DNA of 63,906 bases, the filler included, from Octopus bimaculoides (lineage: Eukaryota), in NCBI RefSeq assembly GCF_001194135.2. It is 8 parts of 7 records of this genome, joined end to end, with 100 filler letters (N's around TTAATTAATTAA, not from the genome) between each part and the next. Parts side by side here need not be neighbours in the genome. Positions count along the whole stretch, not along the records: positions 15,933 to 23,393 come from NC_068986.1; 7 more parts are not named here. The stretch is one strand, 5' to 3'. Shown here piece by piece: positions 15,933 through 23,393 of the stretch (positions are counted from its first letter, which is position 1; each line of letters starts with the position of its first letter). The position numbers were made by a program, and so were the translations under genes. The notes under the pieces are model-generated. The model had not been told where the DNA came from, made no database searches, and was given only the letters and a program-made list of their open reading frames with translations.

Positions 15933-15970
<38 letters not shown>

Positions 15971-16082
15971 TGTATATATAAGTATGTATGTATGTATACT
16001 ATCTTTTGATATTGGAATTCCGTAGTAATTGAGAAGCGAATACATAGTTGCAACATAAACACTCACGCACACACACGCTCAT

Positions 16083-16135
<53 letters not shown>

Positions 16136-16261
16136 CCAGTTAAAGTAGCCATAAACAATACTTTTTGGCTCGTATACTGCTTCTATCTCGAACAGAGATT
16201 TTCTAACGTACTAGTTTCCTAGTTACAAAATCAGTGATTGCGTGACACTGTTTTCTATATA

Positions 16262-16391
16262 TTGCAAGCGAGGTGAGCTGCTGTCATGCCCAGCAACGAG
16301 TACCCACCACTGAGGAGATCCAATACAGATCGAAACCACATGGTCTGGTGGTCTTGAAGCTAGGGTGGCAGGAGTTATCTCTCGCTTGCAA
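16262..16391 (+). mobile_element. TA-flanked rod-like hairpin element (MITE- or retrozyme-like) with an internal hammerhead
   Basis: Termini ttgcaagcgag / ctcgcttgcaa, with TA on both sides. Interrupted pairing continues inward to the HHR. Confidence 0.6.
16297..16356 (+). ncRNA. Canonical type I hammerhead ribozyme with tertiary-contact elements
   Basis: CGAG-UAC-CCACCA-CUGAGGA-GAUC(CAAUACA)GAUC-GAAA-CC(ACAU)GGU-C-UGGUGG-U-CUUG. All core residues intact, GUC triplet (C17 = 16345), perfect 6-bp stem I and 4-bp stem II. Confidence 0.92.
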
Positions 16392-17109
16392 TAAATATCG
16401 AGTACGAGAAGCATACTGAATAAACCAGCTGGTGTTTTCCTAGAGATAAATGGCAGTATCGTCGTCTCTTAGAGGACAACCACATTAAAGTGGCCATAAT
16501 TATTACTTTATATCCATGTAATGTTAATGGTAACCTGAATTGTAAGTGACTCAGTTTAATAATGTTTTAAATGACCATGTAGTTTTATCCTAAGTTGCGG
16601 TACAGTGACAAGCCCCAAAATTTAGGGTGAAATAAATTTATCTGTATCTACTTGCAGCTACTAGGACAACTAATACACAAAAAGTAGAAGGAATTATATC
16701 TACTCACACANNNNNNNNNNNNNNNNNNNNNNNNNNNNNNNNNNNNNNNNNNNNNNNNNNNNNNNNNNNNNNNNNNNNNNNNNNNNNNNNNNNNNNNNNN
16801 NNNNNNNNNNNNNNNNNNNNNNNNNNNNNNNNNNNNNNNNNNNNNNNNNNNNNNNNNNNNNNNNNNNNNNNNNNNNNNNNNNNNNNNNNNNNNNNNNNNN
16901 NNAACCTCTCTCAGTGATTCTCTTCCCTTGAGGGAAGTTTCTCCCCCTCTTCAATTTCCTACCAAACCTTATTTCTCTTTGTCTCTGAGCTGAAACTACC
17001 ACAGATGGCGACAACAGCAACAATGGTGATCACCAGTCAAATTTCACACGTATATATATATATATAAAGACTATAGAACGGTATGTGTCTTGAACGCTTC
17101 AAGATAACA

Positions 17110-17320
17110 GTAATATTGGTTTCAAATTTTGCCACAAGACCAGCAATTTTTTTGAGGGGAGGGTGGAAGTCGATTACCTCAATCCCAGCTATCGACCTTG
17201 AAAGGATAAAAGGCAAAGTCGACCTCGGTGGCATTCGAGTTCTGAACGTAAAGGCGGACGAAATACCGGTAAGCATTTTACCCGACGGGCTAACGTTCCT
17301 GCTAGCTCGCCGCCTAATAC
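17110..17320 (-). mobile_element. SINE copy (family of 640-1275)
   Basis: Family motifs from the tail cacaagaccagcaatttt to the head gctagctcgccgcct. Confidence 0.85.
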
Positions 17321-18015: not shown

Positions 18016-18243
18016 AAAAATTTCGAAGATGAGTTCAGCATGTAGCATTTTTTTTATCTACATTACAACAGTGGAGATGCATATCTTTGTTAGAAACCAA
18101 CTCGTTCCTTACAGGGAGAATTCAAACAATAAAAAAATAAAAGAAAACATAAATATATACACACACGCACTAACACATGCATATATATATGTATAAACAG
18201 CCATGCGCACACTCGCGCGCGCACACGCACACACACACACACA

Positions 18244-18294
<51 letters not shown>

Positions 18295-19420: not shown

Positions 19421-19920
19421 GAAATACGCGGTACATGCGGACCTGCGATGGTTTATAAAGCCACATACAGGTTCATGGAACTTAAATCTAATGAGGAATC
19501 ATCTTCTACCGCGCGTGATTGTTAACGTGATTGTCTGCATGTATATAGATGTGTATATAATGTGTATATATATATGTGTGTGTGTGTGTGTGCATATATA
19601 TATATATATATTATTATAGATCAGGATTCTAGTGAATCGAGCACTTAAATGGTAAGACACCAGGACGGGTCGAAAAATACAATGTTTATACAACAAAAGT
19701 ACACGAATACATACACGAGTACCGAAGCACAGGCGGGAAAGATATGCAGGTTATGTATACGATTAGCTGTACCTAACTGAGTATACATAACCCCTAAGGC
19801 TTACTCTAGGAAACGCACATTGCACTAAATGTACGGTCCATAATATACTTCGGACCCACTCAAAGAGCAGATTCTGACTGAGGTGAATAATAAATAAACA
19901 AATAGCAACAAATGAGTAAC

Positions 19921-20225
19921 GTGTCAATCCACAACAGCTGTTTCCAACGAGTTTTGAATTGCTTAATGGAAAAAATACATCATCAGAATGAAACATTTTC
20001 ATCAGGTGAATACATGAATCACAACATTCAAAAACTCAAAAGCCACCAGTTTACCATAAAACCAGAACTGGTCATAGTATCATGAAGTTGCACAAACTAT
20101 AGTGGCTTTTGAGTTTTTGAATGTCGTAATTCCTGTATTCACCTGATGAAAACGGTTTTTTCTAATGTAGTTTTTCCATTAATCAATTAAGAACTCGTTG
20201 GAAACAGCCGTTGTGGATTGATACA
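19921..20225. repeat. ~305-bp palindromic MITE-like element
   Basis: Arms ~19921-20047 and ~20102-20225 are imperfect reverse complements around a ~55-bp spacer. Confidence 0.9.
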
Positions 20226-20613
20226 TTAGCCAACCATTGTTATTTGTTTATGGATATATATATATATATATATANNNNNNNNNNNNNNNNNNNNNNNNNN
20301 NNNNNNNNNNNNNNNNNNNNNNNNNNNNNNNNNNNNNNNNNNNNNNNNNNNNNNNNNNNNNNNNNNNNNNNNNNNNNNNNNNNNNNNNNNNNNNNNNNNN
20401 NNNNNNNNNNNNNNNNNNNNNNNNNNNNNNNNNNNNNNNNNNNNNNNNNNNNNNNNNNNNNNNNNNNNNNNNNNNNNNNNNNNNNNNNNNNNNNNNNNNN
20501 NNNNNNNNNNNNNNNNNNNNNNNNNNNNNNNNNNNNNNNNNNNNNNNNNNNNNNNNNNNNNNNNNNNNNNNNNNNNNNNNNNNNNNNNNNNNNNNNNNNN
20601 NNNNNNNNNNNNN

Positions 20614-20800
20614 NTAGCACGCCGGGCGAAATGCTTAGCGGTATTTCGTCTGTTTTTATGTTCTGAGTTCAAATTCAGCCGAGGTCGACTTTGCCTTTCA
20701 TCCTCTCGGGATCGATAAATTAAGTACCAGATGCGTATTGGAGTCGATCTAATCGACTGGTCCCCTCCCCCAAAATTTCGGGACTTGTGCCTAGAGTAGA
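20614..20800 (+). mobile_element. SINE copy (family of 640-1275)
   Basis: tagcacgccgggcgaaatgcttagcgg...gagttcaaattcagccgaggtcgactttgcctttcatcc. Confidence 0.85.
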
Positions 20801-21209
20801 AAAGAATATATATATATATATATATATACATGAATGCACGTATTTATCTAAACAAACACACACACACACACACACACACACCGCACATCCACCCCCGCGC
20901 ACACATACACGTCGCGCGCGCATACACATGTATATATGTGTGTATCTATGTATATATGTATATATATCTTTATATAAATTTGCGTTTGTCTGTGCGCGCG
21001 CGCGTGTTTCTCTCTCTCCCGTCTCTCTCTTTATATATCTGTGCGTGTGTGTCGTTGTGTTTGTGATTGACAACCACCGCCGCTTGACAACCGCTGTTGG
21101 CGTGTTTACGTCCCCATAACTTAGCGGTTCGGCAAAGTGGCGATTGAATAAGTACCAGGCTTAAATAAAAAGTACTGGAGTCGATTCGTTCGAGGTGATG
21201 CTCCAGCAG

Positions 21210-21883
21210 AATCTGATGGTGAACACACAAAAACAACTGCTGGCTTGCTGTGTCCCCAAAACATGTACCGAGAGTGATAAAAATCAACCATCCAGTCAAC
21301 ATCATGGTGTTTGGAGTAATCACTAGTGATGGCGACATTATGCCTCCATTCATCTTCTTACACGGTGTCAGACTCAACACAGTGGCCTACATCAAGTGTC
21401 TGGAGGAAGTAGTGCTGTCCTGGGTCAAGAGGGTGGCTGCTGGAAGTCCCTATATCTGGCAACAAGACACTTCACCATGCCACACAAGCAGGAGAACCCA
21501 GTCATGGCTGTCAGATAATTTCTACGACCACACCACACCTAACATCTGGCCACCTAACCTCCCAGACTGCAACTCCCTTGATTATCATGAGTGGTTTGCA
21601 GTTGAGCGAGAGACCAACAAAATCCCTTGTAACACCAAAGGCACTGATTATAGCAGCATTCACCAACTTAAACAAGGAGACCGTCGAGAAAAAGTGCAGG
21701 AGATTCCGAAGTTTGTCTGGAGGCCGTGGTTGAAGCCAATGGCGATTTTATTGAATAAATTTACTCTTTAGTATTTCAAGATATTTTAATGTCATTTTGG
21801 TAAATATATCTGTTAAAATGAGATGTCAGTGTTATTTTCATTTTTGCGTAATTTAGACGACAGTTTATTCACCGCACTCTCTA
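21210..21883 (+). mobile_element. Tc1/mariner maT-family (DD37D) transposase remnant with right TIR
   Basis: WQQDTSPCH...WPPNLPDCNSLDY with 37 residues counted between the second and third Asp. The first Asp lies in the deleted 5' part. Frameshift near the C terminus. TIR-like end tttattcaccgcactctcta. Confidence 0.88.
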
Positions 21884-21919
21884 TAAGTGTGTGTGTGTGT
21901 GTGTGTTGTGTATATATGA

Positions 21920-21971
<52 letters not shown>

Positions 21972-22538
21972 TCACATACATACATACATACATACATACA
22001 TACATACATACATACATACATACATGCATGCATACATACATGCACACACACATACAAATACACTTATATAATAATAATAATAATAATAATAATATCTATA
22101 TGAATATTCATGTGAAAATTTACTTATTTCTGTATATTATGCACTCAAATTGTTTTGAATTTGACGCGAGCCTGTTCAACGCTTAACGGACACAACAAGA
22201 CGAGTAGGATTTTTGACACTAGGTTTTTAGTAAGCCCTGCTGATGAGAATTAAGGGATAACCCAAAATCATGATACAGCTTTCAGCTGAGTTGATATGTT
22301 AAATTTTTTTGCGTGTTGCCCGATTTCTGTTGGTCCGTTATGTTTTTCAGTGAGACAGTGGCTTGTTTGAAGATTTTAACTCTTATTTCTAGCAAGCTGG
22401 TACTTCATGTACCCTCTATTATAATTATAAATTAATTATAGAATTTTATTTTATTATTTTGCCATTTAACGGCATTATTGCTTGCTGGCCACTAATATAT
22501 TATTGTTATTGCTATTATTAATTATACATTTACTACTG

Positions 22539-22799: not shown

Positions 22800-23393
22800 T
22801 GATGATGATGAAGAGCTTGAAAGACTACTACATACTGTGAAAAGATTCAGTGATGATATCGGGATGGAGTTTGGCCTTCAAAAGTGTGTCAAAGCCACTT
22901 TTAAGAAAGGGAAACTGGTAAAGTCAAGTTCAAATCGAATTAGTTGTCGAAACAGTAATAAAGGAACTTGAGCAGGAACAAACCTATAAATACCTAGGAA
23001 TAAATGAAGGCTCTGCTATCCAGCATGCGAGCATGAAAGAGAAAGTTAAGAAGGAATGTTATAGAAGAGTTCGAGCAGTCCTGAAGTCTGAGCTGAATGC
23101 ATAAAATAAGGTGTTAGCCATAAATTCCTTAGCAGTCCCAGTTGTTCTTTATAGCTTCAATGTGCTTAACTGGAATGCCAGTGAAATAATGAAAATTGAT
23201 AGAAAAATCTGCAAGCTACTGACTTGTAATAAGATGCACCATCCAAAGGCAGATGTGGATCGTCTTTACCTTCCCAGAGCTCGGGGAGGTCGAGGCTTGT
23301 TCCAGCTTGAACTTACGTACAAAACCACCACAATCGGACTGGCCAAATACCTTGAAACAACCAACGATTGGATGCTAAAACTTGTTGAAAAAC
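22800..23393 (+). mobile_element. Non-LTR retrotransposon RT fragment (Dong/R4-like), truncated by a gap
   Basis: LLHTVKRFSDDIGMEFGLQKC..YKYLGINE..AINSLAVPVVLYSF..HHPKADVDRLYLPRARGGRGL are typical late-RT motifs of this group. Confidence 0.85.

What the first reader, a model, noticed from the sequence alone, without database searches (positions are those of the whole stretch)
16260..16393. Canonical, tertiary-stabilised hammerhead ribozyme at the tip of a 130-bp TA-flanked rod-shaped element
Seen: every core residue is present (CUGAGGA 16310-16, GAAA 16332-35, GUC with C17 = 16345). Stem I is CCACCA/UGGUGG, stem II is GAUC/GAUC with loop CAAUACA, and stem III is closed by an ACAU loop. Beyond 6 bp of stem I there is a UAC bulge and a further helix CGAG/CUUG. 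Pairing then continues outward (agc/gct, gccc/gggt, ctgtca/tggcag) to perfect terminal arms ttgcaagcgag/ctcgcttgcaa with TA on both sides. Established: a 6-bp stem I with a UAC bulge docking on a CAAA-type loop II is the geometry of the fast-cleaving Schistosoma Sm-alpha HHR. PLE HHRs are usually minimal, and retrozymes carry HHRs in direct repeats. Inference: this is a monomer-competent self-cleaving RNA inside an inverted-repeat, MITE-like and viroid-like rod. It could be an undescribed non-autonomous element family in cephalopods, or a host-retained ribozyme. Novelty was not checked.
Basis: partly seen in the sequence, partly recalled or inferred. Interest (0 to 1): 0.9.

Follow-up and report, generated by a model that had tools for sequence, protein, structure and literature searches.

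The report
Hammerhead ribozyme capping a 130-bp hairpin
A complete, textbook self-cutting RNA motif (a hammerhead ribozyme of the kind common in animal repeat DNA) really does sit at the tip of a 130-base hairpin, but with the databases available I could not tell whether the hairpin is a new jumping-element family or a one-off.

Summary
Window 16304-16351 (+) is a complete type-I hammerhead ribozyme (HHR). Every core base is present. Helix I has 6 bp, helix II 4 bp and helix III 3 bp, and the cut site is C16345/U16346. It matches Rfam HH9 at 31.7 bits, below the gathering score of 52. The lowest-energy fold of 16258-16395 is exactly this ribozyme on top of 34 further base pairs, ending in perfect 11-nt arms (z = -6.3).

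The ribozyme is ordinary: it has the canonical architecture of repeat-associated animal type-I HHRs. The unusual part is its packaging as a sharply bounded inverted-repeat hairpin with TA on both sides. I could not test mobility, because no tool reaches cephalopod genomes. I found no second copy in the piece, in 266 kb of sampled invertebrate contigs, or in the protein and DNA collections.

The TA flanks are not diagnostic. TA is its own reverse complement, and the site is TA-rich. The arms do not match the mariner family in the piece. All four wobble pairs favour the ribozyme strand.

My preferred reading (confidence 0.4) is a solo, minimal retrozyme-like unit. A ribozyme-bearing MITE and a host-retained ribozyme both remain open.

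The parts
16262..16391 (+). The 130-bp hairpin element. Its 5' arm, the ribozyme at the tip and its 3' arm form one continuous structure.
   Evidence: MFE fold at -59.9 kcal/mol, z = -6.3. Pairing stops at these boundaries: the flanks 16165-16259 and 16394-16475 pair no better than shuffles.
16262..16272 (+). Left terminal arm, TTGCAAGCGAG.
   Evidence: It pairs 11 of 11 with 16381-16391. These two arms are the only matches in the window, even allowing 2 mismatches.
16381..16391 (+). Right terminal arm, CTCGCTTGCAA.
   Evidence: It is the reverse complement of 16262-16272.
16260..16261 (.). TA on the left flank. It may be a target-site duplication or simply two more bases of the inverted repeat.
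   Evidence: Read directly from the sequence. The MFE pairs it with 16392-16393.
16392..16393 (.). TA on the right flank.
   Evidence: Read directly from the sequence.
16304..16351 (+). Catalytic domain of the type-I hammerhead. It comprises helix I (16304-09 / 16346-51), core C3-A9 (16310-16), helix II with loop 2 (16317-31), G12-A15.1 (16332-35), and helix III with its loop (16335-44). C17 is 16345 and the predicted cut is between 16345 and 16346.
   Evidence: Rfam HH9 alignment, my own descriptor scan, MFE fold and pair list.
16301..16303 (+). UAC internal loop of helix I, the candidate docking partner of loop 2.
   Evidence: It aligns to the conserved UUAC of the HH9 consensus.
16321..16327 (+). 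Loop 2, CAAUACA.
   Evidence: It aligns to the CAAAA.A of the HH9 consensus with a one-base insertion. The Rfam Hammerhead_1 consensus has CAAAUA here.
16273..16300 (+). 5' strand of the imperfect outer helices, which continue helix I outward.
   Evidence: Pair list. The arms beyond helix I (16262-16300 / 16353-16391) hold 34 bp, of which 4 are G.U on this strand and none would be G.U on the other strand.
16353..16380 (+). 3' strand of the imperfect outer helices.
   Evidence: Pair list.
16131..16164 (+). Left copy of a 34-nt direct repeat. Whether it belongs to the element is uncertain. It could be a long target-site duplication, or the terminal redundancy of a unit of about 311-345 bp that contains the hairpin.
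   Evidence: Local alignment score of 31 against 17.5 +/- 2.3 (maximum 26) in 300 shuffles.
16476..16509 (+). Right copy of the 34-nt direct repeat, about 80% identical to the left copy and 345 bp downstream of it.

Best explanation
This is a genuine canonical type-I hammerhead ribozyme, of the kind carried by repeat elements in animal genomes. It sits at the closed end of a discrete 130-nt hairpin whose arms are simply helix I continued outward.

How it works on a + strand transcript:
1. The long arms zip up and hold helix I in register.
2. The three-way junction forms.
3. The UAC internal loop of helix I docks on loop 2.
4. The RNA cuts itself between C16345 and U16346, leaving a 2',3'-cyclic phosphate and a 5'-OH. 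The two products stay held together by about 40 bp.

Shown: the motif, the fold and the sharp boundaries. Inferred: cleavage activity, and everything about origin.

The origin I favour is a solo, unusually small unit of the HHR-carrying non-autonomous retroelement class (non-LTR retrozyme-like). Such a unit would be propagated as RNA and copied into a TA-rich site by a Penelope-like or LINE-type machinery, rather than cut and pasted as DNA. With only one ribozyme at this locus it can sever a host transcript once, but it cannot release a circle.
For: **The ribozyme is real.**
- All core bases and all three helices are present.
- HH9 scores 31.7 bits with E = 5.8e-5. Rescaled to one family in a 2.7-Gb genome, that is about 0.005.
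- The MFE is the active fold.
- A score below the gathering cut-off is normal for repeat-borne HHRs. An abundant tandem HHR family found in sampled contigs scores 26.5 bits against a cut-off of 34.

**The arms act as a clamp.**
- The isolated 62-nt ribozyme does not give the hammerhead fold as its MFE. The 138-nt hairpin does.

**The constraint looks RNA-level.**
- All 4 transition-type imperfections in the arms are G.U on the ribozyme strand and none are A.C (binomial p about 0.06).
- The + strand folds at -59.9 kcal/mol and the - strand at -51.6.

**It fits the retrozyme class.**
- In a type-I HHR the rest of the RNA must emerge from helix I, which is the architecture seen here.
- Retrozyme RNAs are highly self-paired, their units are 150-450 bp, their invertebrate HHRs are canonical, and solo monomers are common (PMC7229834, PMC7761336, bioRxiv 10.64898/2026.07.22.740005).
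- PLE-type endonucleases prefer (TA)n and (CA)n targets (PMC8557442). The hairpin sits in tctatata|..|taaata, 125 bp from a (CA)n tract.

**The arms do not look like a transposon's.**
- They do not match the only Tc1/mariner family in the piece, whose end is ...CACCCTG|TA.
Against: - There is only one HHR in 7.4 kb. The defining tandem arrangement of retrozymes is therefore absent here.
- At 130 nt it is below the published 150-450 bp range.
- A unit copied from a circle would not be expected to begin and end exactly on the symmetry axis of the rod. Perfect 11-nt terminal arms plus TA on each side are what a cut-and-paste MITE looks like.
- No second copy was found anywhere I could search.
- The G.U bias rests on four pairs.
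- Helix III is marginal, with pair probability about 0.4. Loop 2 has one extra base relative to the consensus, so activity is not assured.
Confidence: 0.4

Rival explanations
1. This is a ribozyme-bearing MITE: a non-autonomous DNA transposon moved by a TA-targeting (Tc1/mariner/pogo-type) transposase that recognises the 11-bp terminal inverted repeats. The hammerhead is internal cargo, either captured by the element or part of its origin.
For: - The terminal arms are a perfect 11 of 11, TA lies on both sides, and the 130-bp size is typical of such elements.
- Pairing stops abruptly at the ends.
- Tc1/mariner remnants are present in the piece.
- Another foldback element lies at 19894-20251.
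Against: - TA is palindromic, so TA on both sides is equally a 13-bp inverted repeat. The site is also TA-rich.
- The arms do not resemble the end of the mariner family in the piece (CAGGGTG...). From memory, they also lack the usual CAG start.
- All four wobble pairs favour the ribozyme strand. A DNA-level repeat would not predict that.
- No second copy was found in anything I could search.
- Two full-text searches found no paper describing an HHR inside a MITE.
Confidence: 0.25
2. This is a host-retained (exapted) single-copy ribozyme, like the intronic HH9 and HH10 of amniotes. It would descend from a repeat-borne hammerhead and would now be kept for cutting or regulating one host transcript. 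The long helix I would then be a selected clamp.
For: - The best Rfam match is HH9 itself, with the same two-part helix I and the same loop motifs.
- The core, all three helices and the outermost 13 bp are flawless, while the middle of the arms carries mismatches.
- No other copy was found.
- The domestication scenario is established for HH9 and HH10 (PMC3088659).
Against: - No exon or gene context is visible. The surroundings are microsatellites and transposon debris, and no Pfam domain was found in any ORF tested.
- Absence of other copies is uninformative here, because no cephalopod genome could be searched.
Confidence: 0.2
3. The mobile unit is larger than the hairpin. It would be a 311-345-bp insert bounded by the 34-nt direct repeats at 16131-16164 and 16476-16509. 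These could be a long target-site duplication, or a 1.1-unit copy of a circular template. The hairpin would be only the insert's structured core.
For: - The direct repeat scores 31 against a maximum of 26 in 300 shuffles.
- The 345-bp spacing matches mollusc retrozyme units of 350-390 bp (PMC7229834).
- The left repeat abuts a (CA)n tract.
- PLEs leave 30-40-bp tails (PMC8557442).
Against: - The repeat copies are only about 80% identical.
- The inner flanks do not pair with each other beyond chance.
- Nothing else in the flanks is repeated in the piece or in the sampled loci.
Confidence: 0.15

Closest known systems
Canonical metazoan type-I hammerhead ribozymes (Schistosoma Sm-alpha, newt satellite 2, cave-cricket pDo500; Rfam RF00163, and HH9 RF02275)
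   Same: - The core is identical.
- Helix I has 6 bp, helix II has 4 bp starting with G10.1-C11.1, the cleavage triplet is GUC, and helix III is short.
- A UAC internal loop lies 5' of helix I.
- Loop 2 begins CAA and ends A (PMC4209133).
   Different: - Loop 2 has 7 nt instead of 6.
- Only one unpaired base (U16352) lies opposite UAC, where HH9 has three.
- Position 7 is G.
- The score is below both Rfam gathering cut-offs.
Non-LTR retrozymes of animals (Cervera and de la Pena 2020)
   Same: - It carries a canonical type-I HHR.
- It has no coding capacity, and its RNA is highly self-paired and grows out of helix I.
- Solo monomers of retrozymes are known.
- An abundant 323-bp unit of this kind, with two HHRs, turned up in a sampled contig that shares the mariner family (L005).
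   Different: - Here there is one HHR and no tandem repeat.
- At 130 nt it is smaller than the published 150-450 bp units.
- The unit is bounded by perfect inverted ends plus TA.
MITEs with TA duplications (Stowaway/Tc1-mariner-derived)
   Same: It has terminal inverted repeats, TA on both sides, a size of about 130 bp, and it folds as a hairpin.
   Different: - It carries a complete ribozyme at its centre.
- Its arms do not match the local mariner family.
- Neither copy number nor empty sites has been shown.
Minimal hammerheads of Penelope-like elements
   Same: Both are type-I hammerheads associated with retroelements that prefer microsatellite and (TA)n targets.
   Different: - PLE hammerheads lack helix III and the loop-loop contacts, and they act as dimers (PMC4209133; PMC7761336). 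This one has both features.
- No PLE ORF was seen in the piece.
Hammerhead viroids and viroid-like circular RNAs
   Same: A hammerhead is embedded in a long, imperfectly paired RNA.
   Different: - This is an open hairpin encoded in DNA, not a closed circle.
- The ribozyme is present in one polarity only.
- In this element the paired state and the active ribozyme fold coexist rather than compete.

Membership tests
Hammerhead ribozyme, type I | Conserved core: C3 U4 G5 A6 N7 G8 A9, G12 A13 A14, A15.1-U16.1, and C17 (any base but G) | tested here: met
   The core bases lie at 16310-16316, 16332-16335, 16344 and 16345.
Hammerhead ribozyme, type I | Three helices around the core, with helix I open and helices II and III capped | tested here: met
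   The MFE of 16258-16395 gives exactly this arrangement. The pairs are listed.
Hammerhead ribozyme, type I | Score at or above Rfam's curated gathering cut-off | tested here: not met
   HH9 scores 31.7 bits against a cut-off of 52, and Hammerhead_1 scores lower still. A bona fide tandem repeat HHR also falls short, at 26.5 against 34.
Hammerhead ribozyme, type I | Loop-loop tertiary contact motif of canonical metazoan HHRs | tested here: inconclusive
   UAC and CAA..A align to the conserved HH9 positions. However, loop 2 has an extra base and the 3' side of the internal loop is shorter. Docking cannot be computed with these tools.
Hammerhead ribozyme, type I | Self-cleavage 3' of C17 | not testable with these tools
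   This needs in vitro transcription. Helix III pair probability is only about 0.4.
Non-LTR retrozyme | Two or more type-I HHRs in direct tandem units of 150-450 bp | tested here: not met
   There is a single HHR in the 7.4-kb piece. No HHR lies 345 bp downstream.
Non-LTR retrozyme | Highly self-paired unit RNA | tested here: met
   The 130-nt hairpin has z = -6.3. A 132-nt circle keeps the fold at -51.2 kcal/mol. The candidate 345-nt unit adds no pairing beyond chance.
Non-LTR retrozyme | Multi-copy in the genome and expressed as circular RNA | not testable with these tools
   No cephalopod genome or transcriptome can be searched by DNA. The indirect searches were empty.
MITE (TA-targeting DNA transposon derivative) | Terminal inverted repeats | tested here: met
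   The arms pair 11 of 11.
MITE (TA-targeting DNA transposon derivative) | Target-site duplication (TA) | tested here: inconclusive
   TA is present on both sides. But TA is self-complementary, so it also reads as a 13-bp inverted repeat. Blast extends the repeat to 16 of 17 in a TA-rich context.
MITE (TA-targeting DNA transposon derivative) | Ends shared with an autonomous transposon | tested here: not met
   This was tested only against the mariner family present in the piece and in 5 sampled copies. That family's end is ...CACCCTG|TA, which is unlike TTGCAAGCGAG.
MITE (TA-targeting DNA transposon derivative) | Many dispersed copies, with empty sites | not testable with these tools
   There is no copy in the piece and none in 266 kb of sampled contigs. 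The source genome itself cannot be searched.
Penelope-like element hammerhead | Minimal HHR without helix III or loop contacts, located in a pseudo-LTR next to an RT/GIY-YIG ORF | tested here: not met
   Helix III and the loop motifs are present. No Pfam domain was found in the ten ORFs and ORF fragments (74-173 aa) scanned from the piece.

The most novel reading that the evidence does not exclude
The hairpin is the founding example of a family of ribozyme-bearing hairpin elements in cephalopods. It could take one of two forms. One is the first MITE known to carry an active self-cleaving ribozyme. The other is a minimal retrozyme of about 130-132 nt, whose tandem copies elsewhere would release the smallest known ribozyme-processed circular RNA. 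In that form, TA microhomology at the rod's far tip would guide one-unit reverse transcription into (TA)n sites.
Probability: 0.25. Interest if true: 0.75.

Novelty: new member of a known kind. Interest (0 to 1): 0.45.

Why it matters
Type-I hammerheads are widespread in animal repeat DNA. How they spread, and what they do for their carriers, is still debated. The open questions include circular RNA intermediates, dependence on Penelope-like elements, and occasional domestication.

A hammerhead packaged in a 130-nt hairpin with sharply defined inverted ends would be a very small test object for those questions, provided it turns out to be a family. It could show whether ribozymes also ride on DNA transposons, or how small a retrozyme can be. 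If instead it is a lone copy, it is one more ordinary repeat-derived hammerhead.

It also shows that annotation at Rfam's gathering cut-offs misses such ribozymes. The 235 reported for the giant squid are those above the cut-off (PMC6962438). Both this ribozyme and the abundant family found in sampled contigs fall below it.

Tried and rejected
1. **Copy search through spurious ORFs.**
   - The element is open in two frames.
   - The minus-frame 63-aa ORF found no candidate in the 5.8-billion-protein index.
   - The plus-frame translation found nothing among 1.84 billion representatives.
   - This is uninformative, because even the locus itself is not in those collections.

2. **DNA pattern scans.**
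   - The pattern of the two arms plus a gap, and ribozyme-specific patterns, gave 0 hits in viral contigs and 0 in prokaryotic genomes.
   - The metagenome scan gave 3 hits, all unrelated long palindromes without a ribozyme.

3. **Sampling related genomes with transposon proteins as bait.**
   - I used all 12 look-ups; the first, with the window's own mariner ORF, found nothing on record. The other 11 returned 13 loci, 266 kb in all.
   - One 20-kb locus is from Octopus bimaculoides; the rest are from ENA assemblies whose hosts I could not identify.
   - No copy of the hairpin or of its flanks turned up.
   - The sample is far too small to exclude anything below tens of thousands of copies.

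4. **Rod beyond the hairpin.** Rejected. The flanks pair no better than shuffles: ddG -9.5 against -8.1 +/- 3.9.

5. **Ribozyme on the minus strand.** None found.

6. **tRNA-like or promoter/terminator signals next to the hairpin.** None found. The promoter scan is bacterial-type and so hardly relevant.

7. **Arms derived from the local mariner.** Rejected.

8. **Rfam microRNA and snoRNA hits in the piece.** These are microsatellite artefacts, all far below gathering scores.

9. **Literature.** No paper in the held library links a hammerhead to a MITE or to terminal inverted repeats. None describes cephalopod hammerheads beyond a count.

Full report
**What is there.**
- The core CUGAGGA is at 16310-16316, GAAA at 16332-16335, and GUC ends at C16345.
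- Helix I is CCACCA/UGGUGG (6 bp).
- Helix II is GAUC/GAUC (4 bp, opening with the usual G10.1-C11.1) and is closed by CAAUACA.
- Helix III is A-U, C-G, C-G, closed by ACAU.
- Outside helix I there is a UAC internal loop with a single U opposite, then CGAG/CUUG. Pairing continues outward to perfect 11-nt arms, TTGCAAGCGAG/CTCGCTTGCAA, with TA on both sides.
- The minimum-free-energy fold of 16258-16395 is exactly this drawing: -59.9 kcal/mol against -37.8 +/- 3.5 for shuffles, z = -6.3.
- The complementary strand folds less well, at -51.6 kcal/mol and z = -4.2, and contains no ribozyme.

**Is it more than chance?** Infernal aligns 16296-16364 to Rfam Hammerhead_HH9 over the full model, with 31.7 bits and E = 5.8e-5 for the piece against all families.
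- The score is below HH9's gathering score of 52. That cut-off is tuned to a narrow amniote family.
- A clearly genuine, abundant, tandemly arranged hammerhead found in sampled contigs also falls short, at 26.5 against 34 on Hammerhead_1.
- In 390 Mb of simulated sequence with the piece's composition, a descriptor as strict as the observed motif hit three times. That is about 1e-4 expected for this piece and about 40 for a 2.7-Gb genome.
- Core plus helices alone would therefore not be decisive genome-wide. Three further features make homology, not chance, the explanation: the UAC loop, the CAA..A loop 2 shared with the HH9 consensus, and the 34 additional base pairs.

**How ordinary is the ribozyme?**
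- Cervera and de la Pena describe the usual metazoan type-I hammerhead as having a 6-bp helix I and a 4-bp helix II that interact through conserved loop bases, plus a short helix III with a 2-4-nt loop (PMC4209133). That is what this one is.
- Reviews from the same group state that invertebrate type-I hammerheads usually have a helix III stable enough for monomeric cleavage. They also say these ribozymes sit in non-LTR retrozymes of 150-300 bp (PMC7761336; PMC7229834).
- The giant squid genome paper reports 235 Rfam hammerhead-1 hits (PMC6962438).
- The canonical, tertiary-stabilised geometry is therefore the expected kind, not a surprise.
- Activity as a monomer is plausible but not assured. 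Helix III pairs have a probability of about 0.4 and are missing from the centroid. Loop 2 has one base more than the consensus.
- The isolated 62-nt ribozyme does not give the hammerhead as its best fold, whereas the full hairpin does. The arms look like a clamp that sets helix I in register.

**The packaging.** This is the interesting part.
- The hairpin is sharply bounded. The sequences just outside it (16165-16259 and 16394-16475) pair no better than shuffles.
- The arms beyond helix I hold 34 bp. Four are G.U on the ribozyme strand, and none would be G.U on the other strand. Random decay of a DNA-level inverted repeat would give both kinds equally. With four of four, p is about 0.06. That points to constraint on the + strand RNA, but it is weak evidence.
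- The TA on each side cannot be read as a target-site duplication with any confidence. TA is its own reverse complement, so it equally extends the inverted repeat to 13 bp. The site itself is TA-rich (tctatata|...|taaata).
- TA-rich and microsatellite targets are also the preference of Penelope-like endonucleases (PMC8557442), so TA does not single out a Tc1/mariner transposase.
- I aligned the 3' ends of the mariner family in the piece and of four sampled relatives. They end ...CACCCTG|TA, so the terminal repeat starts CAGGGTG. That is unlike TTGCAAGCGAG.

**A possible larger unit.** A 34-nt direct repeat at 16131-16164 and 16476-16509 brackets the hairpin at a spacing of 345 bp. It is about 80% identical and scores 31 against a maximum of 26 in 300 shuffles.
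- It could be a long target-site duplication.
- It could also be the terminal redundancy of a copy slightly longer than one unit. The size would fit mollusc retrozymes.
- Nothing else supports this reading, and the inner flanks are unstructured.

**Search for other copies.** This is the test that would settle the interpretation, and I could not do it properly. No tool searches eukaryotic genomes by DNA.
- The piece holds no second copy.
- Translations of the two open frames of the element found nothing in either protein collection.
- DNA patterns found nothing relevant in viral, metagenome or prokaryotic collections.
- Using the mariner and reverse-transcriptase remnants of the piece as bait, I fetched 266 kb. 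This comprised one Octopus bimaculoides locus and several ENA long-read assemblies. Neither the hairpin nor its flanks occur there.
- The best protein match of the mariner remnant is an O. bimaculoides protein at 64% identity.
- The sample excludes only very high copy numbers, and only in genomes of uncertain relation to the source.

**Interpretation.** I am confident (about 0.9) that this is a hammerhead by descent. I am fairly confident (about 0.75) that it would cleave in vitro. For the origin of the hairpin I weigh three readings.
- *Retrozyme-like unit propagated as RNA (preferred, 0.4).* The ribozyme is of the retrozyme kind. A type-I hammerhead necessarily has the rest of its RNA growing out of helix I, as here. 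The wobble bias favours the RNA strand. The insertion site suits PLE-type machinery. The arms match no transposon seen. Against it are the missing tandem partner, the small size and the suspiciously exact symmetry of the ends.
- *Ribozyme-bearing MITE (0.25).* This explains those ends best, but it has no precedent in the literature I could search.
- *Host-retained ribozyme of the HH9/HH10 type (0.2).* This fits the flawless core and outermost stem, but no gene context is visible.

Whichever reading holds, a single ribozyme at this locus can only cut a passing transcript once. The two halves would stay held together by about 40 bp.

**Verdict.** This is a real and well-observed feature, and a new member of a well-known ribozyme class. 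Its packaging may or may not define something new. The genome-wide copy search listed under next steps would decide this quickly.

Noticed in passing
L005 10880-11320; also L016 9004-9401, L014 1125-1217, L015 12291-12411, L006 2955-3219: The ENA assembly ERZ21867824 carries an abundant unit of about 323 bp. The unit has tRNA-like A/B-box sequence (ggtggctgagtgg ... gggtttcgatcccgg) followed by a type-I hammerhead (CCACA CUGAAGAG UUCUGAUAGAAC GAAAC AGUCUGU C UGUGG). In L005 two ribozymes lie 323 bp apart, which is a retrozyme-like or Sm-alpha-like arrangement. Copies occur in 5 of the 7 sampled 20-kb loci from that assembly. The ribozyme scores 26.5 bits, below the Rfam cut-off of 34.
   Followed up: partly
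window 19894-20251: A near-palindromic foldback element of about 360 bp. Its arms are 87 nt and 74 nt long and 84-85% complementary. Its ends (ATAAACAAATAGCAAC...) are unrelated to those of the ribozyme hairpin.
   Followed up: no
window 17190-17292 and 20615-20717 (inverted), partial third copy about 21100-21190: Three copies of a SINE-like repeat, two of them in opposite orientation and 80% identical over 103 nt. A possible truncated tail (ccccaaaatttaggg) lies at 16613-16627, downstream of the hairpin.
   Followed up: no
window 21207-21880: A remnant of a Tc1/mariner-type transposon. It holds a 173-aa ORF with no Pfam hit. Its best protein match is Octopus bimaculoides LOC128250757 at 64% identity. 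Its 3' end is ...CACCCTG followed by TA.
   Followed up: partly
window 22826-23393: A fragment of a non-LTR retrotransposon ORF interrupted by stop codons (...HHPKADVDRLYLPRARGGRGL...). It runs into the edge of the piece. Relatives at 60-77% identity occur in several ENA assemblies.
   Followed up: partly
window 16131-16164 and 16476-16509: A 34-nt direct repeat (about 80% identical, 345 bp apart) that brackets the hairpin. The left copy abuts a (CA)n microsatellite.
   Followed up: partly
window 15933-16136, 18150-18294, 19551-19622, 20805-21000, 21884-22069: Every Rfam microRNA, snoRNA and scaRNA hit in the piece falls on (CA)n, (TA)n or (CATA)n microsatellites and is far below its gathering score. 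These are artefacts of low-complexity sequence.
   Followed up: yes
L009, L010, L011 1-9000: Three ENA assemblies share a dense run of co-oriented ORFs. The run includes a weak Pox_A32-like packaging-ATPase hit and a 678-aa ORF, and it lies next to the reverse-transcriptase bait. It may be a Polinton/Maverick-like or endogenous viral insertion.
   Followed up: no
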